From the NCBI GenBank assembly GCA_002104945.1, contig MCFH01000085.1, positions 94,736-158,735 of the forward strand: a stretch of DNA of 64,000 bases, read 5' to 3'. A program made the position numbers and the translations under genes. The DNA is from Piromyces finnis finn. Taxonomy: Eukaryota > Fungi > Neocallimastigomycota. The notes beneath the pieces were generated by a model. The model was given only the letters and a program-made list of their open reading frames with translations, was not told where the DNA came from and made no database searches. Positions 1-21,304 of this stretch are shown piece by piece; positions within the stretch are counted from its first letter, which is position 1; every line of letters begins with the position of its first letter.

Positions 1-3000
1 AAATACTGAAATGCTAAAATGATATAATGGTATGATATATCCTCCTTTTTTTTTTTTTTTTGCTAAATATAACTTTGTTTTGTAATGAAATTATAAAAGA
101 ATACATCATATTAGCTATACATTATAAAAGAATATATCATATTAGTTATATATTGTTAATTAATTCAAATATTATTCTTTAAAAGGCATTCTATCTATAC
201 TATTTATAGTGAATTAATTTCATTTTATTTATTGATAGAATATAGTATATCTGTATGGGTATATGTATAATATGTATAATAGATGGTGAACTCGGTCACC
301 ACCATCAATATACTATATTAAATATTCACTTTTATTATACCTATCATTATATGAATTTATAAAACCATCCTTCACCTTTATAAAATAAAAAAATGGAATA
401 TATTATAACATTTAATAAAGTATCTTGTTCTTCTACATCTTCTACAATTCAATCCTTTTTTTAACCTGCCTAAACGGAACCAAGATTTTGTATAGTAATT
501 TTATAATATTTTAATTATTTTAATATATATTAATTTTAATTTTATTAAAAATGATTCAATAAAATAATTTTAAAATTTTATTTTTTTAAATTTTTAAAAA
601 TAATTTTAATATTTTAAATTAAACTTTAAATTGTTTAAAATTAAATAATATAATATTAAGATTATATTGTAATATATAGAAAATAAATTCAAATAAATCA
701 TCCTATTTAAAAGAAATATTAAAATTTTTAATTAATGAAGGAGGAAGGATGAAAATAAAAAAAAAAAAAAGGCTGTAAAGAAAGAGGTTTATTTCAAAAA
801 AAAAAAAAAAAAAGTAAATTATAAAATATTTAAAGTAAAAAAATGAATATAAAAAGAATGAATAAAAGTTTAATTTTGATATACAATACCTATAGGTTTG
901 AATAAGAATAGGAAATTTATCTCATAACTATTATTTATCCATGGTCATTTTGATTTTATTTATTATTTAAAAAAAAAAAAAGTATTTTATACACATAATA
1001 AAAATAAATATAATTTAATGAATTTAATGAATAGGATGGTGATAATAATAAAAACTTTTGAATAAATAAAAAATGACTAATAATTATCAATATTCTAAAT
1101 GTTTTTTTTTTTCTAATTTACTCGTGTCCAGTTAAAGGAGGATCATTCACCATGATTTAAACTTTAATTAATCAAAAAAAAAAAAAAAAAAAAGATTCTA
1201 TTTTTAATAAATAAAAAGCTTATGCATTAATGAAAAAATTAAAATATAAAAATACAATAGTAACGTTACTTTTATCATATTAGAAAAAAAAAAAAAGTAT
1301 TACAATGAGTTTTATATAATAATAATAAAAAAGAGATAACTTTTTTTATATATACGTATTTATTGAATATTTAGTGAAGATAATAATAAATACATTTAAT
1401 GAATATCAATAATAAAAGAAAACTTATTAGTAATGGATAAATGAATATGATTTCGTTAAACTGAGATTACTAAAATCATAGTGCAATATAAATAAGAATG
1501 TATTATTACAATAAAGAGTTGTTCTATTGTAATAATACATTCCTATTTATTACAATAAAAAAAAGCTTGCTAAATGATAAAAAAAAATGTATTTTTATAT
1601 TTTAATGAAATGATTAAATAAATAGTAATTCATACTAATAATAATAATAACAAAGTAATGAAAAAACAGCAAGTTTAAAAATACATTTTGTAAATACATT
1701 GTTGTTGTAAGTAAATTCATTTTACGTAAACATTATATAAATTAATGTTTCAAAAATTCTTTTTTCCTAAGAAATACCTTGTTTTTTTAATAACATTCTT
1801 CAATTCTCTTATTATTAGAAATAATTTTCTGTACAAATCTACCACCACAATCCTCCTCCTCCTCCTCCATTACCACACCCACACCAAACAATAATTTATA
1901 ATTTGGGAAAATCTTATTAATAAATTGTTTTTAGGATAATTTTTAATAAATTAAAAGATTGCAAATATATTCATGCTTAATAATCCTTATCAGTAACACA
2001 TATTATCAAATATTATTATATATATTAAATGATATATAATTTAAAAAAGTTTAATTTTCCATCTGATAATGTTCATGTGATAACATTCATGTGATTTAAT
2101 CGGAAATGATCATTTTTTTTAATATAAAAAAATATGAAAAAATACAGAAAAAAAAAAAAGATTAACTAAATAATAAAAAAAACAAAGAAGAGAAAATATA
2201 GAAAAAATATGGCATTTTCATCTTTTTTATATTTAACCTTATGATTATATACTCGTTACAGTTGTTACCTTTTTTATCCTTTAACTATGAAGTTTTATTT
2301 TAATTTTAAGAAATAATAATAAAAAAAAAAGAAATCCTTTTTATACCAATAAAATAAAATGTTTTAGGGACAAAGTAAAATTATGACTCACCTAACTATA
2401 GAAGTTTATTTTTTAAAATTCTTATAAATATATAAAAAAAAAGCTTAATAAACATCACATAATTAAGTGTATTATTGTTTTCAATCATTTTTTTAAAGTA
2501 TTCATCTTTAATTTTTAAAGGAATTTACTGCCATTGTTCTTGTTGCTTTACTTTTCTTCTTTTTTATGTTTAAAAAATGAAAGGTTAGAAAATAAAGATG
2601 AATTATTAATCTAACCCACAAATTTTATTTAATCTTTTTTAATAATTTTTTAGATAAATTAAATTTTTTTTTAAAAAAATAAATACAAAAAAATTAAAAA
2701 AAAAGCAATATTTTATTGAAAATGCTTTTTTAAAGGTAAGTAAAAATGAAAAAAAAAACCTTTTATTGCTATTGAAATTCAGATTCAACATTTTTTAAAT
2801 TCAAATATAAAAAGGTTTATCAGATATTCTTTATTTTTAATTTCTTTTTCTTTGTTATCTTTTTTGTGTCTTTTTCACCTTTTTGAAACATTTTAATTTA
2901 ATAAAAAAAGTGTGTTAACAAAATATTTGTTCGCAATTATAAAAGTGATTATCAAAAATGAGTTAAATTTTGACCAATAAGAATCACTTAAAATATAAAA

Positions 3001-3929
3001 GATCTTTATGAAATTCTGTATAAATTAAAATCATACATTACATTACATAAACACTTGTGTAAATGTAGGACACATTTTTAATAAATTGTTGCTTAGCATA
3101 AATAGCATTAATAGGAAGAAGAAGAGGTGGTAATTGAAAAACTATTTTTCTTTTAAATAAAGGTAAAGATTAAAAGGTTAAAAATTAAGTTGTTTTTTAT
3201 TAATATATGTATATATCTCTTTTTTAATGACTTTCTTTTATAGAAATTATACATAAAACCTTTGAATAAATAAAAAATTATTAGTAATTATTAATGTTCT
3301 TCCAACAGCTTTTTCTTTTTATTTTTTTTTTTTAATTTGCTTGTGCCTAGTTAGAGAATCGTTCACCATGATTTTAAGAAAACGATATTAAAATAATAAT
3401 TAATACTTTTATAATAAAATCTGCATTAAAAATTATTTTGTTTTATCTTTAATTTTTAAAAAAAATAAATATTAATATAAATAGTTTATATTATCATGAG
3501 GTATATAATAGTCCTTACAAAAGATATTTATATATTCATAAGCTATATATAAGTAAATAAATGTATTTCAATAATTCCAAAGTATTTAATTTTCTTTTTT
3601 AAAATAATTAGTATTTTTTTTTGATTTTTAATATATATATAATATTTTTTTGTGAAGATATATAATTGAGTAATTTACTTTTTTTTTTTTTTCTTTTATT
3701 TTTGTTATGGAAATATAAGAATTATGCTTTTGTTGAATTTTTATTTAGTAAATTACTCATTTATATTATTATTATTATTATTATTTATTAATATATATTT
3801 CAAAAAGAGATAAATATTGGAAAGAATGATAATTATAAAATGTTTATACTGGAAGTCTTGATAAAAATATTTAGGGCATAAAAACATTGTATAAAGTATT
3901 TTCTGAAAAATAAATATATATTATATATA

Positions 3930-4267
3930 TACTATTACTATTACTATTACTATTACTATTACTATTACTATTACTATTACTATTACTATTACTATTACTA
4001 TTACTATTACTATTACTATTACTATTACTATTACTATTACTATTACTATTACTATTACTATTACTATTACTATTACTATTACTATTACTATTACTATTAC
4101 TATTACTATTACTATTACTATTACTATTACTATTACTATTACTATTACTATTACTATTACTATTACTATTACTATTACTATTACTATTACTATTACTATT
4201 ACTATTACTATTACTATTACTATTACTATTACTATTACTATTACTATTACTATTACTATTACTATTA
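3930..4267. repeat. (TACTAT)n hexanucleotide microsatellite, about 56 copies
   Basis: Uninterrupted tactat array read directly from the sequence. Confidence 0.97.
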
Positions 4268-5095
4268 TAATAATATATAAAAATATGAAAACTAGTAGAG
4301 TCGAAAATGAAGTAAAGATTTATAATGTAAAACTTTTAAAGAGTTGAAAATGATATAATTTCTTATATTAGAAAATGCTAATGCTAATGAAATGGATAAA
4401 TAAAAGCAATAGCAATTTTATTTTGTTATCGTTGAATATAATTATTTTTTAGAAAAGATTTAGGAATCAAAATTTTTTAATGAATTTTAAAAATACTGAA
4501 TTATTATTATTATTTTTTTCAATCATTAGAATAAATAAAATAAATGAACCATAAATAAACCCCTATATAAAAGAAAAAAAACATATTTATATTTAATGAT
4601 ATATCGATTCATCAATAAGTAATAATTTATTGTTGTTCTTCACTTAATTATTATTATACATTAAAAATAATACTATAAAAAAAATTGATATATATTTATT
4701 AATCCTTTTTTTTTTTATTTACTTATTTATTTAAAATAATAAAGATATTTCTATTTACAAACATTTTGTGTCATACTGTGATAAATCATAATAAATTATA
4801 GATATTATATTGAATACAATATAACTATTAAAAAACTTTTTAATTATATATCATATTAAAAGATAGAATGAAATTTATTATCAATAATTTAAAGTTTAGT
4901 TTGGTTTGACTTGGTTTACTATTAATAATAAAAAAAAGGTATTTTTTTTAATGTGATTTTTTGATAAAATAATGAAAACTAAGATGAATTAATGTTCATT
5001 TTATTTTTTGGGTGATATGTAACAAGTTGACTTGTCATTTATATGAATGTCATTTTTTTTTAAAGATTCTTATTATGTACAAATGGAATATTTCA

Positions 5096-6342
5096 TTATG
5101 TTAATTTATCCATATTATTAAGCTGAAAAAAAGAAATGATAATAATACAGAGAAAAAATATTTGATATATATATATATTAAATAAAAATAAACAGGTCAG
5201 GAATGAATATAAGCAAATAATTATGTTTTATTAATATTTTTAAAAAATTTAAACCATTCTTTAATTACATTTTTATTAGGTTGATTAAAATGAATCGTGG
5301 CCCATGTTGGAAATTCGCGTTCTATTTTCATAATTTTATCTTCTAACACCTTTATTCTTTCATACATTTTTGGTGGTAGTGGAGTCACTTTAAATAGTAA
5401 TAAGATAATAACATAATAATAAAAATTAGAAATATTAATGTCATATTATGTTATAATGGATTGATTTGGAAAAAATAGTTTACAGTATTAAAAAACTATT
5501 ATTTATAATTTTATTTATTATTTATAATTCTTAATGCAATTTATAAAATTATTTATCGGTACTACTACTATAACTATTTTTTTTTTTTTTTTTAATTATA
5601 TAAAATAAACACATTACATTATATTTAATATATTTATATATATTTTACCTATATTTAGGTGCTCTTTTATGTTATTAATTCTTTCTGATAATCCATTATT
5701 GTCAATATTTTGACTATCTTTTGATTTTGATTTACCATTTTTATTATCATTATCATTGTCTGTCACGGAACGATCGAGAGGTCCCACTTCATTTTTAATA
5801 ATATTTAATTTTAGCTGTTGATTTCGATTAATTCTTGCTGGACATGTTCGCGAACACATTTCTTTTTTGTATTTATTTTGGTCGATAAATTCCTTTTTAT
5901 TACTTTCATTATTTTCCGTTTTCTTTTTATGTATATATGTATTTATTTTTGTTTCCATCTACATGAACACATATATATAATAGAATAATTTTAAATTAGC
6001 ATGGATGTCTAATGAATGAATAGAAAAAGAAAATAATAGCATTAAAGAAAAAAGAGGTTTATCTTTTTTTTTTTTTTTTATATAACTTAAAAGTACCTCA
6101 TTTGATTTTTCTTTTAATTATTAAAATAAATTTATATATGTATATGTATAAATAAACAAAATCATTAATTAATAATATAAATATTTGTATTTAAAATAAT
6201 TTATATATAAAAAAGGAATGTTAAAATTTACTTTGCATTTTAGTTTCTTTTTGATCTTCTTTTAACAATAATTTTCGCTTATAAAATTCTTTTGATTTAC
6301 AATGCTTTTTGTTTTATTTTATTTTAGATATAAATTAAAAAA

Positions 6343-6378
<36 letters not shown>

Positions 6379-6955
6379 ATATAAAAAGAAATTTAATATC
6401 ATAACAGAATTTTAAAAGGAAATCTTATTTATATATGCATTTTTAAAGAATCAAAGTTTTTATGTATACCATAATATCCTGTACAAAAATTTTTGTTATT
6501 TCACGTTGTTCTTCGGGCTTTATTGAACTGTAAATGGTATCCATTTCATTTTGTAACATTGTTAAAGAGTTTTCACAACCAAGCTATCGATATTTTATTT
6601 TATAAATATATTGTTTATTTACATTTACATTTTATATTTTATATAAAAACATTATTGAAAAAAACAGTTATTTTTACTATTATTAATTATTATTATTATT
6701 TTTAGGAAAAAAAGAATTTCTAAAGATTTCATTTTAATTTTTAAAAATTAGATTTCATGGAAATTTTATAAATTGTGAAGAAACATTTTCTTATTTTTAA
6801 GACTATATATATAATATTATTTTGTTTTGTTTTCCTCTTTTTTTTTTTCAAAAAATAAAATAAAAATAAATCAAAATCATTTCAATTACCAAACTAAGAT
6901 ATGAATATAATGCCAAGTGAATGGAATTAGTAAAACTGTCTCTTTCATAGGCCAT
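5096..6955 (-). CDS. MBIP: MBIP (MAP3K12-binding inhibitory protein 1)-like protein, 7 predicted exons
   Basis: Phase-consistent GT-AG exons: 6955-6890 (MAYERDSF...), 6583-6470, 6304-6232, 6110-6097 (14-nt microexon), 5958-5649, 5387-5269, 5122-5096 (last exon tentative). Peptides METKINTYIHKKKTENNESNKKEF...CSRT...LKLNIIKNEVGP, GLSERINNIKEHL and PPKMYERIKVLEDKIMKIEREFP resemble, in order, the MBIP blocks recalled as IDRRISAFIERKQAEINENNVREF...CART...VKVSRVVNTYGP, VEERLQNIEAHL and PRDIYQRIKKLEDKILELE. Confidence 0.65.
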
Positions 6956-9900
6956 TTTGAAAATTCTTTTTTTTTTTTTTTTCCTATTATTTATTTTATT
7001 AACCTAATTAAAAAATAAAAATAAATTAAAACTGTCTTTTGTTATTTTCAATTTATTTTTATAAATATATTTATTGATAGTCGTTGGATTATATCTAATA
7101 TATAAATACTTTTTATTCTAATTTTTATTATTATTATTTATTTATTTTTCTTTTTATATATATATATATAAATTAATAATAATAATAATAATAATAAAAA
7201 TTTTAATTAATAGATATTTAAAAAAAAAAATTAATGGAAAAATTCAAATATAGAATTAAAATGGAAATGATTATAGTAGAAAAAAAAAATATAAATATAA
7301 CATTTCTCTAAATAAAAGAAAACCCTTAATAAATAATATTTCACACAAACATACACACAAATATATGAATGCACATTTATTTCTTTAGAAATGCTTTTTC
7401 AATATAATTAATTTCAATAAAATTATTTTTTGAATTTTGGTGCTCAAAAAACTATTATTATTTGTTTTATTTTTACTGTGGATGATGTTCATATAATAAC
7501 CAACCAAAAAGCAATAATACAAATAACCAACATCATCAATAGCAGTAGCAATAATAATCACTATTTAATAATAACTTTATTTTAATTTATTCAAGGATTG
7601 ATATATTTTAATGAATTAAATAGTAATTAATTTTATATTTATGATTAAAGATATTAACTATAATAATAATAATAATTATAGTAGAATAAAGATAAGATTT
7701 TAATTATATATTCGTATATATATAGTATTTATGTTTTAGAATAATACAATTACAAAAATACAACACAATTGTTTGTATTTCTTTTATTATTTTATTAGGC
7801 GGAAAAACTCTTTTGATATTAAAAAAAAAAAAAGTTTTAAGATTTAATATATGTATTTTTAATTTATTAAGGATATATTAATTTTTTTTAAAATTTCTTT
7901 TCTAAAACAAAATGTAATGTAATCCATTCTCTTACCTTAACATAAGCTTTTGAATAAAGAAAGAATGCTATGAATGGGATCGTGCTTGAGATAATTGGAA
8001 TAAAAATCAAAATTAAAAATTATATCATTCTTTATTAAAAACATACATAAATTTCTTTTCTTTTTTTTTTTTTTAAAAAAAAACAAAGAATGAATATAAT
8101 ACTAATAAGATATATTTTATCCAATTAAAATTATAAGATATGAATTCTTTTATTATCATTAGAGGTTGCCTTTTTTTTTTTATATATTTATAATAACCTT
8201 TTTAGTATTAGGAAAATAGATTAAAACATTAACTCTTATTAATCATTATATAGTTTATATTTTACCATATATATTTTAATGGTACTAATTTGTATAAATT
8301 AAACCTATTTTTAATTATATATTAAAAACTTTATAATATATATTTTTTTTATTTAAACTTTTACTGGTCTATAACTAATAAAGAGTAATAAAACTACTCT
8401 TTATCAAAAATTTTCATTTTAAAATGTAATTTAATTTGATATATTTAACTTTTTTATATTATTTGAATCGTTGTATATATAATGTCATATATATTTTGAA
8501 TAAAATAAATTATCTTTCTCTCTATACAAAGTAACTATTTATTACATTTTTTAAATATGTATTTGATTTATTACAATTTTAAATGTACCTTTTAAAATTA
8601 TACTTTAATTTATAAAATATAAATATTATAACATAATTAAAGTGATTAATTTAGGTAAGAGGAATAGATTATAAAATGATATATTTATATAAAACAGATT
8701 ATCCTATTATAGCATTAATATTAAGAAATAATTATTTGTTATTATATTTCTTCATAATATCAGAATTAAAAAAATGATCATTTCAAAAGTAAACAAATAA
8801 TTATATTAAAATGAAAACAATTTTTTTTTAAAAGAATATACATTTTATTGAATGTATATTTCAAATTTCTCATTTATAAATTATAATATGAACTTTTAAT
8901 ATATTGTAATATATTTTAAATAAAAGAAAAATGGTGAAAATAGTTGATTTATTAATTTCATCAAAAACTTAATCAGTTTTATTAGTTGAATATATATGTG
9001 CATATTTTATTTTTAATATTAGCTCTATTAAATATAACATTTTTTTATTTAAAAAAAAAAAATACAATAATATGATATATGAAATTTAGTATTTTAAGTA
9101 ATTTGGTTTAATTATTAGTTAATTTTTAAAGGTATAAAAAGCTTTATGCTAATATTAAAAATAAAAATAGACACTTTAATATTATATACCTTTTTATTAT
9201 TACATTAATATTATTATTACAATCACTATAATAAATGATTTCTTTATTTTATAAACTTTTTTTTTTTTTAAATTAATTAAATGATTAATGTTGAGTTTCT
9301 TTTAATTGATTTATATATTTTGTGAAATTACAATTATATTTTATATTATTGATAGTCCATTTACATAAATATATTCATATATTATAAAAGGTAAAAAAGT
9401 CCAGAGTAATAAAATGAGTATATAAAAGTTTAATAAAAGATAATTTTATTTAATAGTATTTCTAATTATCAATCTAATTTTATTTAATAGTATTATTAAA
9501 TGTATTCCTTTTTTTTTTATGATAAATAAAATAATTTATTTTTTTAGTAAAAAATGAATAAATAAATGATTACCAATTTTTTTTTTCATTAAACTTTATT
9601 TTTCATTCATTTTTCAATTTTTCCTTATAATATAGGTTAATAAAAAAAAGAAAATATATATTGAATAAAGAAAGGTAATGTAAATTATATGGATTTTAAA
9701 TATTCATATTTTAATGATAAAACACAACTAATGATTGTAACAAAAAAAAAATAATTATAATAAAGTATTACAATAGTATAAATAAGATTAAAATGCTGTA
9801 TAAACACATAAACACATAAATAATGTTAATATTTTAAAAAAATGTCTATAAAATTATTATATTTTTATTATCATTTTCTAAATTTAAAATATTTGTCAAT

Positions 9901-12145
9901 TATTCATTTTTTTTTATGTTTCTTTTAATGTAAAAATAATAGGAAATACACCTCGCATTAACAGTTCTATTTTATTGCGCAGTTAAGGTTAATTATATAA
10001 AATTAATAACAATTTTACTTTTTAAACTTTTTAAAAAATTAATTTATGAATAAATCTTTTTTATTATCAATTTCATTTATATTAAAAATGGTCCAAAATA
10101 ATTCTTGTTGGTAAGCACAAAAATTTATTATAAAATATTAATATAATAATGGAAAAAAAAAAAAAAAAAAGAATTTTAAACCAAATAGAGGCTTCCTTTT
10201 CAAAAAACAACGATATATTATTATTATTATAATCATCATCATCATCATCATCCTGTTTATTTAACAAATATAAAATAATATAAAATATAAGTTATAAAAT
10301 TTAAAAAAGGGGAAATTTATAAAAATAAAAGTTTGTTTTAAAATAGGAGAAAGATACAAAAAATTAAAAAAGGATTTAATAATTAATGTAATTATTATTG
10401 TCTTCATTATCCTTGTTAGCATTGTTGCTAATTCTTTTTAATGAGCCTTTTTTTTTTTTTAATTAAGTAAAAGTCAAAATTTATTATTTATATTTTATCT
10501 AGAAAACTGTCTTTCCCTTTCCTTTCTATTACTATTTATTTCTTAATAATTACCATTAGTAGTTAAAACCTTTCCCTTCTTTTTTGATCATTTTTATAAA
10601 GAATATTTTTTAATAAAAACCATTATTATTATCGTTACTTTTGTCTGCTGTTGTTCTATTCTATTTTAATTTATTTTTTATTTTTTTGAAGCTTTATATT
10701 AATTAGTTTTATTAATGTATATATAAAAAAGAAAAGTTTAGTTATATTATTATCTAATTTCTTTTATTTTTTTTTTGTTAATTGTTTTAGGCTATTATTA
10801 TTATTATTATTTTTTTTTTTTTTTTTTTTTTTGACTTTCTTAATTAATGCAAATGCATGTATAAAGTACAAATTATGAATGGTATAGAATGTGTTATTTT
10901 TTTTTTTTTTTTTGTATTATTTTTTGAGTTTAATATCTCACGGAAAAAGAAAAAAAAGGTTTAATTAAAAAGTTTAATTATTTGAAATGAATTAAAAAAT
11001 ATATATAAAATACTTATATATTATATATATATGAAATACAAAACCATTCAGCATATATTTTGTTCATTTTAGGTTTTAGTTATCAGCTATTATTATATTA
11101 TCAAACAACGTCATCATCTTTATTGTTATTATTTTAGATTTTAATTTTTTTTTTTTAAACTTTTTCATTAAAGATGTATATATATATATATATTTTTTTT
11201 TTTATTAATTGAAATACAATAAAATACATAATTGAAGAGTTGTAGTTTTATCTATATTTTTTTCATTTTAATAATGTAAAAGGGGACTTTGACTATATAA
11301 ATAAAAATTTTTTCCCAAAAAAATATTTTTTTTTTTCTTTGCTCAATTTGTTTCTTTTAATATTTATAAAAAAATTAATAATAAAAATTCAATTATATAA
11401 ATAAATTTATCAATGTCACTATCAGTAAAATAATAATAATAATAATTGTAATGAGTAGTCATTATAGAGATATATAAAGTTATATAATTAAATTAAAAAA
11501 AAATATAATTAATATAATTAATTACCAATATATATTTTTTTTTAATAATTATATAACTTTCAACATTATAAACATTAATAATAATATCATTAAATAATAT
11601 ATTTCAATTTTTTTTTTTTTTTAAAGTGGTATATATTAGATATTTTTTATGAATATAAATATAAAATTTTAGTAATTTATTTCAAAATCTCAATAAATCA
11701 ATAATTTTAAACTAGAAGAAATTATTTGTAGTAGAATTTATATATTTTTGTTCTAAATTTTTTATATCATTTTTATTCCAATAAAATAATTTAGTTAAAG
11801 ATATATTATTATTTTCATTTAGTTTAATGAATAAACATATACATATATAAGACGATCTATTAATTATTTTATTATTATTAATATAGTAAGAAACTATTTT
11901 TTTCCCTCCTATTATATATATTTTTCTTAACTATCTTTAAAAAATAATTTAAATTATTAATAATAATATAAAAGTTATATTATATATTTATAAGTAATAA
12001 GCAATCACAAGAAAAAAAAATATATATATATATATTTTCTTTTTCTTCCATTGTGTATTAGTTTAAGTATAATATTGGTATAATATAACTTTTTATTTTT
12101 AAATAATAAATTAGAATTATAGACAAAAAAAAATAAAAATTAATA

Positions 12146-13301
12146 ATGGTTTTCAAGGTATTTTGTGATATCAATGTCTCTCACATAACAAGTGAAGATT
12201 TAAATAAAAATGAAAATATATGTTATGATATCATACCAAAATATGATGATAATAAAGAAAATTGGGATCCTAATGAATCTAAAAAAAATAGTGCTATCTC
12301 TTCTTCATTAACCTCTCCAATACCTTCAAAGAATGAACAAAAAATTAATGAATTAAAGTCTGAAAATAGAATAGAAAATATTGAAAATTGTTCAAAGGAA
12401 GATAGTGTAAAAAAAGATACTCCAAATGAAGATGTTTCACCAAAACAAGATAGTAAAAATGAAAATTTATTAAACAAAGAATCCGCATATACTGAAAATA
12501 TAAAGAATGAAAAAGTAAAAAATGAAAATCTAAAAGCTTCAACTACCACTGAATTAAAGGAAGAAAAAGGAAATTCTGAAAATTTAAAAGATAATAGTAA
12601 AATAGTTGAAAAGAAGGAAATTCAGCAATCGTACAAAAGACAAAGAGCACCACTTGAAGATATAACCTATATGTTTGTAAAAGAAAAACCAAAAATATTG
12701 TCAAAACGTATAAAAATAGTAAAAGTAATTATTAATCTCAATAAACTTTAATTGCAATTCAAATTTTAATATTTTATCTAATCTTTTTTTTTTATTATTA
12801 AAAAAAAGAATGAACAAGAAAAATCTTCAATATCTTTAAAGGCTATAAAAACTGAAGAATTATCTGTAAGTATTATTATCAATCTATTTTAATTGTACCT
12901 AAAAATTAATTCCAATCTATAATACATACTGTTATTATTTATACTAAAATATAATTTATTATTATTATCCTTTGAAATTGTTAAAATTATAGTCTAAAAA
13001 GGAAGATAAAGAATTAAATAAATGTTCTAAAATTTCATCAGAAAACTTAAAAGAAAATAAACAACCAATACGTAAAACTCCATTGGGAAATGTTCATAAT
13101 CGTTCTAACATTAATATTTTTAACAATAACCTTAGTATAAAGAATAATGATGATACAAAAAAAGATATACCCAAACCATTTTTTATTGATGTTAAAAAGA
13201 GTAAAACATTTAGAAAAACACTTATACCAAAAAAATCTTTAAAAGCAAAACCAAATCCATTTAATTCATTTAATAACGTATCTGCTAGGATGCTTCGTTA
13301 A
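12146..13301 (+). CDS. Orphan low-complexity protein (~314 aa, 3 exons) with ABBA, two KEN boxes, D-box(es) and a C-terminal LR tail; candidate APC/C regulator
   Basis: Exons 12146-12724 (or 12718), 12809-12865 and 12993-13301 join in phase 0 with GT-AG ends. Motifs: FKVFCD, DNKENWDP, RAPLEDIT, KENKQP followed by IRKTPLGNVHN, and C-terminal SARMLR*. Confidence 0.75.
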
Positions 13302-14734
13302 ATTCAATATACCATTTCCAAAAAAAAAAAAAAAAAATACAATTATCAATTCGTATTTTTTTTTTTTTTCCCCCATGTATAATAGTTTTTTATTTATTTT
13401 ATTTTATTGATGTTACAACAACGTACGATTTTACAAAAACAAACAAACAAAAAGTATTATTATTGTATATATATATTGTTACATTATGAGTGTATTATTA
13501 ATAATGAACTCTACCTTTTAAAATTTATAAATTTTTATATTTATAATATACTTCATTATTAAATAAAATACATCTTAAATTCATCATATAACAATATATA
13601 CCATATAATAATTTTTTTTTATTTTTAATAACGTTCTTAAATATATACTATTTAGTATATTTCTATTAGTATTATTATTTTTTAAAATTCAAATTGCAAG
13701 TAATCTATTATATATACAAAAAAAAAAAAAAAAACATGTTAAATATTTCAACTTCATTTTACATAATAACCATATAATATAAATTCTAATTTAAAACGTC
13801 AAATAACCTCATCATAAATATTCATAATACTAATTATATAACAATAACTATTATTTATAATTAGTTATTTATTATAGTAATATTGGTATTTCTCATTTTT
13901 AACACAAAATATAAATAAAAAAATAAAATAAAATAAAATTGAAGACATTTAAAATTAAAAAATTGTGGTGGTGTGTAGTGCACACAAATCTTTAAAATTT
14001 TATTCATTTTGCCCATTTCGTTCCAAAATTTTAATTTATTTATTTTTTTTTTTAATCTTGAATTTTTTTTTTTTTTTTAATTTTTATATTGTTTATAGAG
14101 CAAAAGTTGAATTAAAAGTTTTTAATATATTTTTTCTAAAAAAAAAAAAGTGAATTGATTTCTATTCTTTTATAAAATAAAGATATTTATGTATGTATGT
14201 GTTGCTTTATAATAATAATAATAATAATAATAAAAATAATAATAATAAAAAACAAATATAAAATTATATAAATTGATAATTCATTCATCCAATATAGAAC
14301 TATTATTAATAATATATATAATTTACTTTTAGTAATAATATTATATAATAATCCAGGAAATATAGTTCAATTTTTTAATAAAAAGATCAAATTGTATTTT
14401 ATATTCAATACAAAATTTTCATTTTTCATTTTTTTTATAAATATTTTAAGCTATTATCAATCAAACTTGAAACAATTAAATTTTCAAATCAAAAATGAAA
14501 TCTATTAATCTTTAATAATTAAACCATTTTAATATTGTTATGCTTGAATCACAGTCATAATTTTTTTTTTTTTTTTTTAATCTTTTCTTTAAACATATAT
14601 ATACATTTTCTTTCTATAAGAAAATTCAAAAATAAAAAAATAATACAGTATACACAGTATACATTTGATAATAACAAAATTAATTTAAACAACGACAATA
14701 ACAACAAATAAAAGTAAAACTAATATTAAAAAAA

Positions 14735-21304
<6,570 letters not shown>

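What the first reader, a model, noticed from the sequence alone, without database searches (positions are those of the whole stretch)
12146..13301. Orphan protein with the full set of APC/C-binding motifs: candidate Acm1/Mes1/OSD1-like APC/C inhibitor
Seen in sequence: an otherwise disordered Lys/Glu/Asn-rich protein has an ABBA match Fx[ILV][FHY]x[DE] = FKVFCD (12152-12169), two extended KENxxP boxes (KENWDP from 12254, KENKQP from 13050), a D-box RAPLEDIT (12644-12667), a second D-box-like KTPLGNVHN right after KEN2, and a terminal ...ARMLR*. Established knowledge: ABBA, KEN and D-box bind Cdc20/Cdh1, and IR/LR/MR tails dock on APC/C TPR subunits. Pseudosubstrate inhibitors combine these motifs (yeast Acm1, S. 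pombe Mes1, plant OSD1/UVI4 with an RTPLRDIT D-box and MR tail). Inference: this is an unannotated APC/C inhibitor or regulator in a zoosporic fungus, located next to a mitotic-type kinesin-4.
Basis: partly seen in the sequence, partly recalled or inferred. Interest (0 to 1): 0.75.

Follow-up and report, generated by a model that had tools for sequence, protein, structure and literature searches.

The report
Candidate APC/C regulator of gut fungi
A small, unstructured protein found only in anaerobic gut fungi keeps, across all sampled lineages, nearly the full set of short motifs that dock onto the cell-division ubiquitin ligase APC/C, so it is most likely a new lineage-specific brake on, or privileged target of, that ligase.

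Summary
Window 12146-13301 (+) is a three-exon Piromyces finnis gene. It is already annotated, as hypothetical protein BCR36DRAFT_364161 (314 aa), so it is not unannotated.

The protein is predicted to be fully disordered and matches no Pfam, NCBIfam, PDB or ESM Atlas family. A profile search of 1.84 billion proteins found only eight relatives, all the same Neocallimastigomycota family.

In nine full-length orthologues (44-59% identical) the linkers diverge. These parts are invariant or nearly so:
- the N-terminal ABBA-type motif
- DDxKENWDP, at a fixed 34-residue distance from it
- a D-box R-x-P-L-x-D-I-T plus the extension [LM]FVxE
- a second KEN
- a PL-x-x-I/V D-box-like unit
- the C-terminal RMLR

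A polyadenylated Neocallimastix transcript contig shows the same three-exon splicing and encodes the tail.

APC/C and coactivator binding is likely (about 0.8). Whether the protein is an Acm1/Mes1/OSD1-like pseudosubstrate inhibitor (about 0.45), an early high-priority substrate, or the unidentified securin cannot be settled by sequence.

The same stretch was also noted from an overlapping window in this scan (s1-183582).

The parts
12146..13301 (+). Whole gene, start codon to stop codon. It encodes the 314-aa disordered protein annotated as Piromyces finnis BCR36DRAFT_364161.
   Evidence: P0001, 100% identical. AlphaFold2 mean pLDDT 46 and pTM 0.12. ESM Atlas pLDDT 0.40.
12725..12808 (+). Intron 1 (GT...AG, 84 nt).
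   Evidence: The intronless relative contig L001 aligns with a gap here. An intron sits at the same place in Neocallimastix and is removed in mRNA contig L006.
12809..12865 (+). Exon 2, 57 nt.
   Evidence: The middle exon is also 57 nt in Neocallimastix californiae.
12866..12992 (+). Intron 2 (GT...AG, 127 nt).
12152..12169 (+). ABBA-type motif FKVFCD, residues 3-8.
   Evidence: It matches Fx[ILV][FHY]x[DE] (PMC5179498). K4, F6, C7 and D8 are invariant. Position 1 is F or L and position 3 is V or I. The codons carry synonymous changes.
12245..12271 (+). KEN box 1 with its context DDNKENWDP, residues 34-42.
   Evidence: Invariant apart from D/N at position -1. D/N at -1 and a downstream Pro are the favoured KEN context (PMC5717348). 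There are no indels between the ABBA motif and this KEN in any orthologue.
12635..12685 (+). KRQR, then the D-box RAPLEDITY, then the conserved extension MFVKE; residues 164-180.
   Evidence: R167, P169, L170, D172, I173, T174, F177, V178 and E180 are invariant. The D-box shares 7 of 9 residues with the best natural-residue peptide RAPLSDITN (PMC12401543). It resembles the OSD1 D-box RTPLRDITH. Position 9 is never Asn.
12701..12724 (+). Basic stretch SKRIKIVK (PKRVKIVK in the orthologues), read as a nuclear localisation signal.
   Evidence: K187 and R188 are invariant. The nuclear-signal reading is inference only.
13038..13067 (+). KEN box 2 with its context SENLKENKQP, residues 228-237.
   Evidence: S228 and K232-E233-N234 are invariant. 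The following Pro is present in most lineages but not all.
13074..13100 (+). D-box-like unit KTPLGNVHN, residues 240-248.
   Evidence: P242 and L243 are invariant and the PLxN[IV]xN pattern is nearly so. Position 1 is K, I or S.
13167..13298 (+). Conserved basic C-terminal module, residues 271-314 (IPKPFF..VKK.K...IPKK...). It ends in ARMLR at 13284-13298.
   Evidence: K273, P274, K280, K281, K283, I290, P291, K293 and R311-M312-L313-R314 are invariant in nine full-length sequences. Conservation stops at the stop codon.

Best explanation
The gene encodes a Neocallimastigomycota-specific, intrinsically disordered protein that acts as a multivalent ligand of the anaphase-promoting complex.

Proposed mechanism (inferred, not shown):
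- The N-terminal module binds one Cdc20/Cdh1 WD40 propeller at two sites. The ABBA motif lies in the groove between blades 2 and 3, and KEN1 lies on the top face.
- The near-optimal D-box fills the D-box receptor.
- The non-Asn position 9 and the conserved hydrophobic extension keep Apc10 from engaging productively, as reported for Acm1.
- The C-terminal Leu-Arg docks in an IR-tail or C-box pocket of Apc3 or Apc8, as the MR tails of Nek2A and OSD1 do.
- KEN2 and the D-box-like unit could hold a second coactivator, or take over after the first set is released.

The net effect would be competitive, pseudosubstrate-type inhibition of APC/C. The protein itself would eventually be degraded, as in the Mes1, OSD1 and Acm1 mode.

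Shown here: the motifs, their conservation, their spacing, the disorder and the splicing. Inferred: every binding step and the direction of the effect.
For: Motif matches and their conservation:
- All motif matches are verified in the sequence.
- They are invariant or nearly so in nine full-length orthologues of 44-59% identity, whose linkers are only about 49% identical and full of indels.
- Synonymous codon changes inside the ABBA, KEN1 and D-box codons show constraint at protein level.

Spacing:
- ABBA to KEN1 is fixed at 34 residues.
- In BubR1, ABBA272 and KEN2 bind one Cdc20 and their spacing is functionally required (PMC5179498).
- In Acm1 the A motif lies at 61-70 and NEN at 90-92 (PMC3690534).

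D-box:
- Pro3 and Ile7, the residues found optimal for Cdc20 binding, are invariant here.
- The P. finnis D-box shares 7 of 9 residues with the best peptide RAPLSDITN (PMC12401543).
- Like the inhibitors Acm1 (Val at position 9) and OSD1/UVI4 (RTPLRDITH-IV and RTPLRDISA-VV), it lacks Asn at position 9 and continues with hydrophobic residues.

Tail and order of motifs:
- OSD1 and Mes1 share the order KEN, D-box, C-terminal MR, and the OSD1 MR tail is required for function (PMC3406007).
- Here the tail is RMLR in every full-length lineage of A5.

Other:
- Predicted disorder.
- No other domain or family explains the conservation.
- The chance of the full motif set in a shuffled protein is about 1e-5.
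Against: - No binding, ubiquitination or phenotype data exist.
- The protein is 17% lysine, so it is easily ubiquitinated.
- ABBA motifs and MR/LR tails also mark early substrates (cyclin A, Clb5, Nek2A, Kif18A), so the motif set does not separate an inhibitor from a substrate.
- The terminal pair is LR, not the MR or IR of the tested cases.
- One contig of the Neocallimastix cluster ends ARILL.
- The tail codons are also invariant at synonymous sites. Protein-level selection there is therefore not separately shown, although conservation does end at the stop codon.
- About 40 conserved basic residues before the tail are not explained by the model.
- ABBA position 1 is Leu in two lineages.
- The second D-box-like unit lacks Arg at position 1.
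- The ABBA pocket of the fungus's own Cdc20/Cdh1 could not be examined.
Confidence: 0.45

Rival explanations
1. It is a privileged APC/C substrate rather than an inhibitor. The ABBA motif and LR tail would give it high affinity and coactivator-independent docking. It would then be destroyed early in mitosis, even under checkpoint signalling, as cyclin A and Nek2A are. Its real function would lie in the conserved basic C-terminal module, for instance chromatin, nucleolus or spindle binding.
For: [quoted passage not shown]
- The protein is very rich in lysine.
- A 40-residue conserved basic block before the tail is not accounted for by known APC/C motifs.
- Degron affinity does not predict whether a D-box inhibits or drives degradation (PMC12401543).
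Against: - Nearly every conserved block coincides with an APC/C motif.
- There is no folded or otherwise recognisable functional domain.
- The non-Asn position 9 and the conserved D-box extension resemble inhibitor D-boxes more than substrate D-boxes.
Confidence: 0.22
2. It is the unidentified securin of anaerobic gut fungi. KEN and the D-box would time its destruction, and a conserved patch with an invariant glutamate would occupy the separase active site as a pseudosubstrate.
For: - Securins share only KEN and D boxes plus a variable conserved patch with an invariant Glu. They are otherwise unrecognisable between clades (PMC6690013).
- This family has KEN1, a D-box and an invariant Glu (E180) just after the D-box. 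It also has a nearly invariant Glu in the K[DN]ExEK patch.
- Size and disorder fit.
- No securin is described for this phylum. The paper search returned none in its listed hits, which is weak evidence.
Against: - No match to Pfam Securin, even at E up to 10.
- Degron-like motifs are spread over the whole length, instead of an N-terminal degron part followed by a C-terminal separase-binding part.
- The C-terminal half is strongly basic.
- ABBA motifs and an [ILM]R tail are not known securin features (own knowledge).
- The candidate Glu patches lie next to or inside the D-box region.
Confidence: 0.17
3. The conserved blocks serve an unrelated function, and their match to APC/C motifs is coincidence helped by the K/E/N-rich composition.
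For: - KEN arises by chance in 53% of shuffles, and the orthologues carry non-conserved KENs in their linkers.
- The N-terminal 47 residues are conserved well beyond the two motifs.
- The motifs are short.
Against: - The joint chance of the motif set is about 1e-5 per shuffled protein.
- Each motif is conserved at exactly its defining positions, including favoured flanks: D/N before KEN, Pro after it, and Pro3 and Ile7 in the D-box.
- The ABBA-KEN spacing is in the range of known bidentate binders.
Confidence: 0.12

Closest known systems
Arabidopsis OSD1/GIG1 and UVI4, and fission-yeast Mes1 (meiotic and mitotic APC/C inhibitors)
   Same: - A short, domain-less protein.
- The same order of a KEN-type box, a D-box and a C-terminal hydrophobic-Arg tail (PMC3406007).
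- The D-box is almost the same string: OSD1 RTPLRDITH-IV against RIPLEDITH-LF in the Pecoramyces-type orthologue.
- The tails are alike in make-up: RTLMSMR in cereal OSD1-family members against SARMLR here.
   Different: - No detectable sequence homology.
- The tail is LR, not MR.
- This family adds an N-terminal ABBA motif, a second conserved KEN with a D-box-like unit, and a long basic C-terminal block.
Saccharomyces cerevisiae Acm1 (pseudosubstrate inhibitor of APC/C-Cdh1)
   Same: - ABBA (A motif), then KEN, then D-box, in that order, on a disordered chain.
- The ABBA-KEN distance is about 30-37 residues.
- The D-box has a non-consensus residue at position 9 and a functional extension (PMC3690534; PMC12401543).
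   Different: - No homology.
- Acm1 has no [ILM]R tail.
- Acm1 has a 14-3-3 site and a Cdc20-specific D-box 1.
- In this family the linker between KEN1 and the D-box is about 125-140 residues, against about 20 in Acm1 (the Acm1 figure is from my own knowledge).
BubR1/Mad3 ABBA-KEN-ABBA cassette
   Same: An ABBA motif about 30 residues upstream of a KEN, with constrained spacing so that both bind one Cdc20 (PMC5179498).
   Different: No TPR or Mad3-BUB1 domain, no second flanking ABBA motif, and no link to Mad2.
Securins (Pds1, Cut2, PTTG1, PATRONUS)
   Same: A disordered protein of about 200-370 residues with KEN, a D-box and a conserved Glu-containing patch (PMC6690013).
   Different: - No Pfam Securin match.
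- Motifs are spread along the whole chain.
- The C-terminus is basic and ends in an LR tail.
- Separase binding is untested.
Nek2A and Kif18A (substrates with MR and LR tails)
   Same: [quoted passage not shown] The LR tail of Kif18A rests on my own knowledge of Sedgwick et al. 2013, which the review cites.
   Different: Those are a kinase and a motor protein with folded domains. This protein has none.

Membership tests
Acm1 family | Sequence homology to Saccharomycetes Acm1. | tested here: not met
   A profile search of 1.84e9 representatives returned only the Neocallimastigomycota family. A PDB profile search, which includes the Acm1 chain of 4BH6, gave no hit at E up to 10.
Acm1 family | A motif (ABBA), KEN and a pseudosubstrate D-box on one disordered chain. 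| tested here: met
   The motifs are conserved and in the same order.
Mes1 / OSD1-UVI4 class of inhibitors | A KEN or GxEN box upstream of a conserved D-box RxxLxx[LIVM]. | tested here: met
   KEN1 is at residue 37 and the D-box at 167-173. Both are invariant. Definition from PMC3406007.
Mes1 / OSD1-UVI4 class of inhibitors | A C-terminal Met-Arg tail. | tested here: inconclusive
   The terminal pair is Leu-Arg (RMLR) in all nine sequences of A5. One variant contig ends ARILL. LR is a related tail but not the same one.
Mes1 / OSD1-UVI4 class of inhibitors | Sequence homology to plant OSD1/UVI4 or to Mes1. | tested here: not met
   No plant or fission-yeast protein appeared among the hits. A profile-profile comparison with an OSD1 alignment was not run.
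Mes1 / OSD1-UVI4 class of inhibitors | Direct binding to Cdc20/Cdh1-type activators and inhibition of APC/C. | not testable with these tools
   This needs biochemistry or complex prediction.
Securin | Match to the Pfam Securin family (as I recall, PF04856). | tested here: not met
   It was not among the Pfam matches at E up to 10.
Securin | KEN and D boxes plus a conserved patch with an invariant Glu (criteria of PMC6690013). | tested here: inconclusive
   KEN1, the D-box and invariant E180 are present. The criterion is loose, and the Glu sits 13 residues after the D-box Arg.
Securin | Binding and inhibition of separase. | not testable with these tools
   No complex prediction or assay is available here.
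Emi1/Emi2/Rca1 | F-box, a zinc-binding region and an LRRL or RL tail. | tested here: not met
   No Pfam domain was found. C7 is the only invariant Cys. The tail is MLR.
BubR1/Mad3 | An N-terminal TPR (Mad3-BUB1) domain with KEN1. | tested here: not met
   No Pfam match. The protein is predicted to be wholly disordered.

The most novel reading that the evidence does not exclude
This could be the first dedicated ABBA-containing APC/C pseudosubstrate inhibitor outside Saccharomycetes. It would have arisen independently in anaerobic gut fungi. It would merge in one chain the Acm1 solution (ABBA, KEN, and a D-box with an Apc10-disabling extension) and the Mes1/OSD1 solution (KEN, D-box and a hydrophobic-Arg tail). 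A second KEN plus D-box-like unit would let it clamp two coactivator molecules, as the mitotic checkpoint complex does. It might control the synchronous nuclear divisions of zoosporogenesis.
Probability: 0.3. Interest if true: 0.7.

Novelty: new variant of a known kind. Interest (0 to 1): 0.55.

Why it matters
Motif-based APC/C inhibitors (Acm1, Mes1, OSD1/UVI4, Emi1/2) are unrelated between kingdoms and have each been found by genetics. This family would be another independent invention, found from sequence alone. It combines motifs that known inhibitors use separately.

It also gives a natural D-box that is almost the engineered optimum.

It offers a first handle on cell-cycle control in Neocallimastigomycota, where almost nothing is known. 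If it proves instead to be the securin, it would fill a gap for early-diverging fungi.

Tried and rejected
Searches that found nothing:
- Pfam, NCBIfam, a PDB profile search and the ESM Atlas gave no usable match. The Atlas best score of 0.78 is at chance level.
- A word search restricted to residues 1-50 found only family members.

Read evidence for P. finnis itself:
- The only P. finnis expression evidence is therefore indirect. Four small runs from three studies, guessed to be RNA, hold 0.69-0.77 of the sampled words, as expected if the introns and flanks are missing.

Other motif readings, checked by eye and dropped:
- PIP box at KDIPKPFF: wrong register, and FF is not conserved.
- PP1 RVxF at KRVKIV: no aromatic residue.
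- B56 LxxIxE at LEDITY: no terminal Glu.
- Separase ExxR site: not conserved.
- Coactivator C-box at [LI]IP[KR]K: it lacks the contiguous R-[FY]-I.

The alternative donor at 12718 was rejected, because the orthologues keep the two residues it would remove.

Paper PMC6873173 (Qin et al. 2019, on the D-box extension) is not held. Its content is cited only through PMC12401543.

Full report
**What is there**

The window is Piromyces finnis DNA with 21.6% G+C. At 12146-13301 on the + strand lies a three-exon gene: exons 12146-12724, 12809-12865 and 12993-13301, with GT-AG introns of 84 and 127 nt. Its translation is 100% identical to the deposited hypothetical protein BCR36DRAFT_364161 (P0001, 314 aa). 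The gene is therefore annotated but unnamed.

- FKVFCD, residues 3-8
- KENWDP, from residue 37
- RAPLEDIT, from residue 167
- KENKQP, from residue 232
- KTPLGNVHN, from residue 240
- ARMLR followed by the stop

**Chance**

The protein is 17% Lys, 13% Asn and 10% Glu. A bare KEN is therefore cheap: 53% of 200,000 shuffles contain one.

The other matches are rarer:
- ABBA match: 1.3% of shuffles
- two KENxxP: 0.05%
- RxxLxx[ILVM]: 9.9%
- an [ILM]R end: 0.4%
- the whole set: 1e-5

Orthologues carry up to six KENs, and most of them sit in linkers and are not conserved. Only the positionally conserved ones count.

**Relatives**

- Pfam, NCBIfam, a PDB profile search and the ESM Atlas give nothing.
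- A word-based search found nine proteins.
- An exhaustive HMM search of 1.84 billion representatives found eight at E up to 0.001, all the same family.
- A search limited to residues 1-50 found family members only.
- Named members come from Piromyces sp. E2, Anaeromyces robustus, Neocallimastix californiae and N. lanati, and an entry listed as Pecoramyces ruminatium / Orpsp1_1.
- A metagenome scan added further lineages.
- Several deposited or predicted models are truncated because they read through intron 1 (P0004, P0005, P0006, P0012, P0016).

**Conservation**

Nine full-length sequences that are 44-59% identical to P. finnis (alignment A5) have these invariant positions:
- M1, V2, K4, F6, C7, D8
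- D34, D35 and KENWDP 37-42
- K164, R165, R167, P169, L170, D172, I173, T174, F177, V178, E180
- K187, R188
- S228 and KEN 232-234
- P242, L243
- K273, P274, K280, K281, K283, I290, P291, K293
- R311, M312, L313, R314

There are no indels between residues 1 and 47. The 48-160 linker, by contrast, is about 49% identical and full of indels.

Synonymous codon differences inside the ABBA, KEN1 and D-box codons show that the amino acids are what is kept.

- ABBA position 1 is Leu in two lineages. This is still inside the broadened consensus discussed in PMC5179498.
- The Pro after KEN2 is not universal.
- A third KEN, about 17 residues before KEN2, is present in most lineages but lost in P. finnis.
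- The second D-box-like unit never has Arg at position 1.
- One contig in the Neocallimastix cluster ends ARILL.

**Splicing and expression**

In N. californiae the genomic locus (L005) and a JGI contig (L006) are 99-100% identical. The exception is two GT-AG segments of 110 and 112 nt that are absent from L006. L006 ends in a poly(A) run. It is therefore a spliced mRNA, its middle exon is 57 nt as in P. finnis, and it encodes the ARMLR end.

A Piromyces-like contig (L001) is one uninterrupted 310-codon frame. It aligns to the window with gaps at both P. finnis introns.

For P. finnis itself, four small runs from three studies hold 0.69-0.77 of the sampled words of 12000-13500. Those positions were not sent to any search tool afterwards.

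**Structure**

AlphaFold2 with the family alignment gives mean pLDDT 46, pTM 0.12 and no secondary structure. The ESM Atlas model has pLDDT 0.40. The protein is disordered.

**Reading the motifs against the literature**

- ABBA. The consensus Fx[ILV][FHY]x[DE] is met (PMC5179498). The Asp at position 6, which salt-bridges to blade 2 (PMC5717348), is invariant.
- KEN1. It has the favoured D/N at position -1 and a Pro shortly after.
- Spacing. The fixed 34-residue distance from ABBA to KEN1 is comparable with two known cases. In BubR1, ABBA272 and KEN2 bind one Cdc20 and the spacing is required. In Acm1 the A motif lies at 61-70 and NEN at 90-92.
- D-box. It carries the two residues found optimal for Cdc20 binding, Pro3 and Ile7. 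In P. finnis it differs from the best natural-residue peptide RAPLSDITN only at positions 5 and 9 (PMC12401543).
- D-box position 9. It is Tyr, Phe, His or Ser, never the preferred Asn. It is followed by the invariant [LM]FVxE.
- Known inhibitors show the same features. Acm1 has Val at position 9 and a D-box extension that perturbs Apc10. OSD1 and UVI4 read RTPLRDITH-IV and RTPLRDISA-VV.
- Order of motifs. OSD1 and Mes1 share KEN, then D-box, then a C-terminal MR. The OSD1 tail is required in planta. Cereal OSD1-family tails read RTLMSMR, which resembles SARMLR here.
- Tail mimicry. MR tails mimic the IR tails of coactivators and Apc10.

**Interpretation**

That this protein binds coactivator and APC/C is likely; I put it at about 0.8. 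What it then does is open.
- I favour a Mes1/OSD1/Acm1-like competitive inhibitor that is itself eventually degraded (0.45). The reasons are the inhibitor-type D-box end, the multivalency, and the absence of any other functional domain.
- ABBA motifs and MR/LR tails also mark early substrates, and the protein is rich in lysine (rival, 0.22).
- Securins are defined only by KEN, a D-box and a conserved patch with an invariant Glu (PMC6690013). E180 meets that loose test, so securin is not excluded (0.17).
- Coincidence remains possible (0.12).

**Context**

The downstream gene (14735-21304, +) encodes a kinesin. Its motor domain best matches KIF4 and KIF7 among solved structures.

**Novelty**

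The family has no detectable homology to any known APC/C regulator. It combines motifs that known inhibitors use separately. It is a new, lineage-restricted variant of a known functional kind, and it rests entirely on sequence inference.

Noticed in passing
window 13284-13301, and the matching ends of L001, L006, L007, L008, L010, L011 and L012: The last codons are AGA/AGG ATG CTT CGT TAA. They are identical at synonymous sites in all lineages apart from one AGG, and they use Leu and Arg codons (CTT, CGT) that I would expect to be rare in a genome this A+T-rich. Conservation stops exactly at the stop codon and the 3' UTRs are unrelated. A nucleotide-level constraint on the tail codons cannot be excluded.
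   Followed up: partly
window 14735-21304 (+): A multi-exon kinesin gene. The ORF pieces at 14735-15139 and 15723-17393 match the Pfam Kinesin motor domain. The best solved relatives are KIF4 and KIF7 (kinesin-4). A 969-aa ORF at 18395-21304 has no Pfam match and is probably the tail.
   Followed up: partly
window 12999-13016 (residues 215-220, KEDKEL): Most orthologues have a third, positionally conserved KEN here (KENKES or KENKKS), about 17 residues before KEN2. P. finnis and two metagenome lineages have lost it.
   Followed up: partly
window 13221-13238 (residues 289-294, LIPKKS): The invariant I-P-[KR]-K, preceded by basic residues, loosely recalls the IPxR core of the coactivator C-box DR[FY]IPxR. 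It lacks the contiguous R-[FY]-I. This is speculative.
   Followed up: no
P0004 (Piromyces sp. E2, PIROE2DRAFT_14109), P0005, P0006, P0012, P0016: These deposited or predicted models of about 200 aa are truncated. They read through intron 1 after PKRxxxxK and end in intron-encoded junk. The full proteins are 310-326 aa.
   Followed up: yes
P0010 (JGI contig in the Neocallimastix cluster): This single sequence ends ARILL instead of ARMLR. It may be a natural variant or a sequencing error. Other members of the cluster (P0013, P0017, P0018, P0019) end ARMLR.
   Followed up: partly
They lie in the 3' flank outside the gene.
   Followed up: no
window 1-12000: This is a long stretch of 12-20% G+C with a single ORF of 80 codons or more (5614-5958, -, no Pfam match). 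It is apparently gene-poor, A+T-rich DNA upstream of the gene.
   Followed up: no
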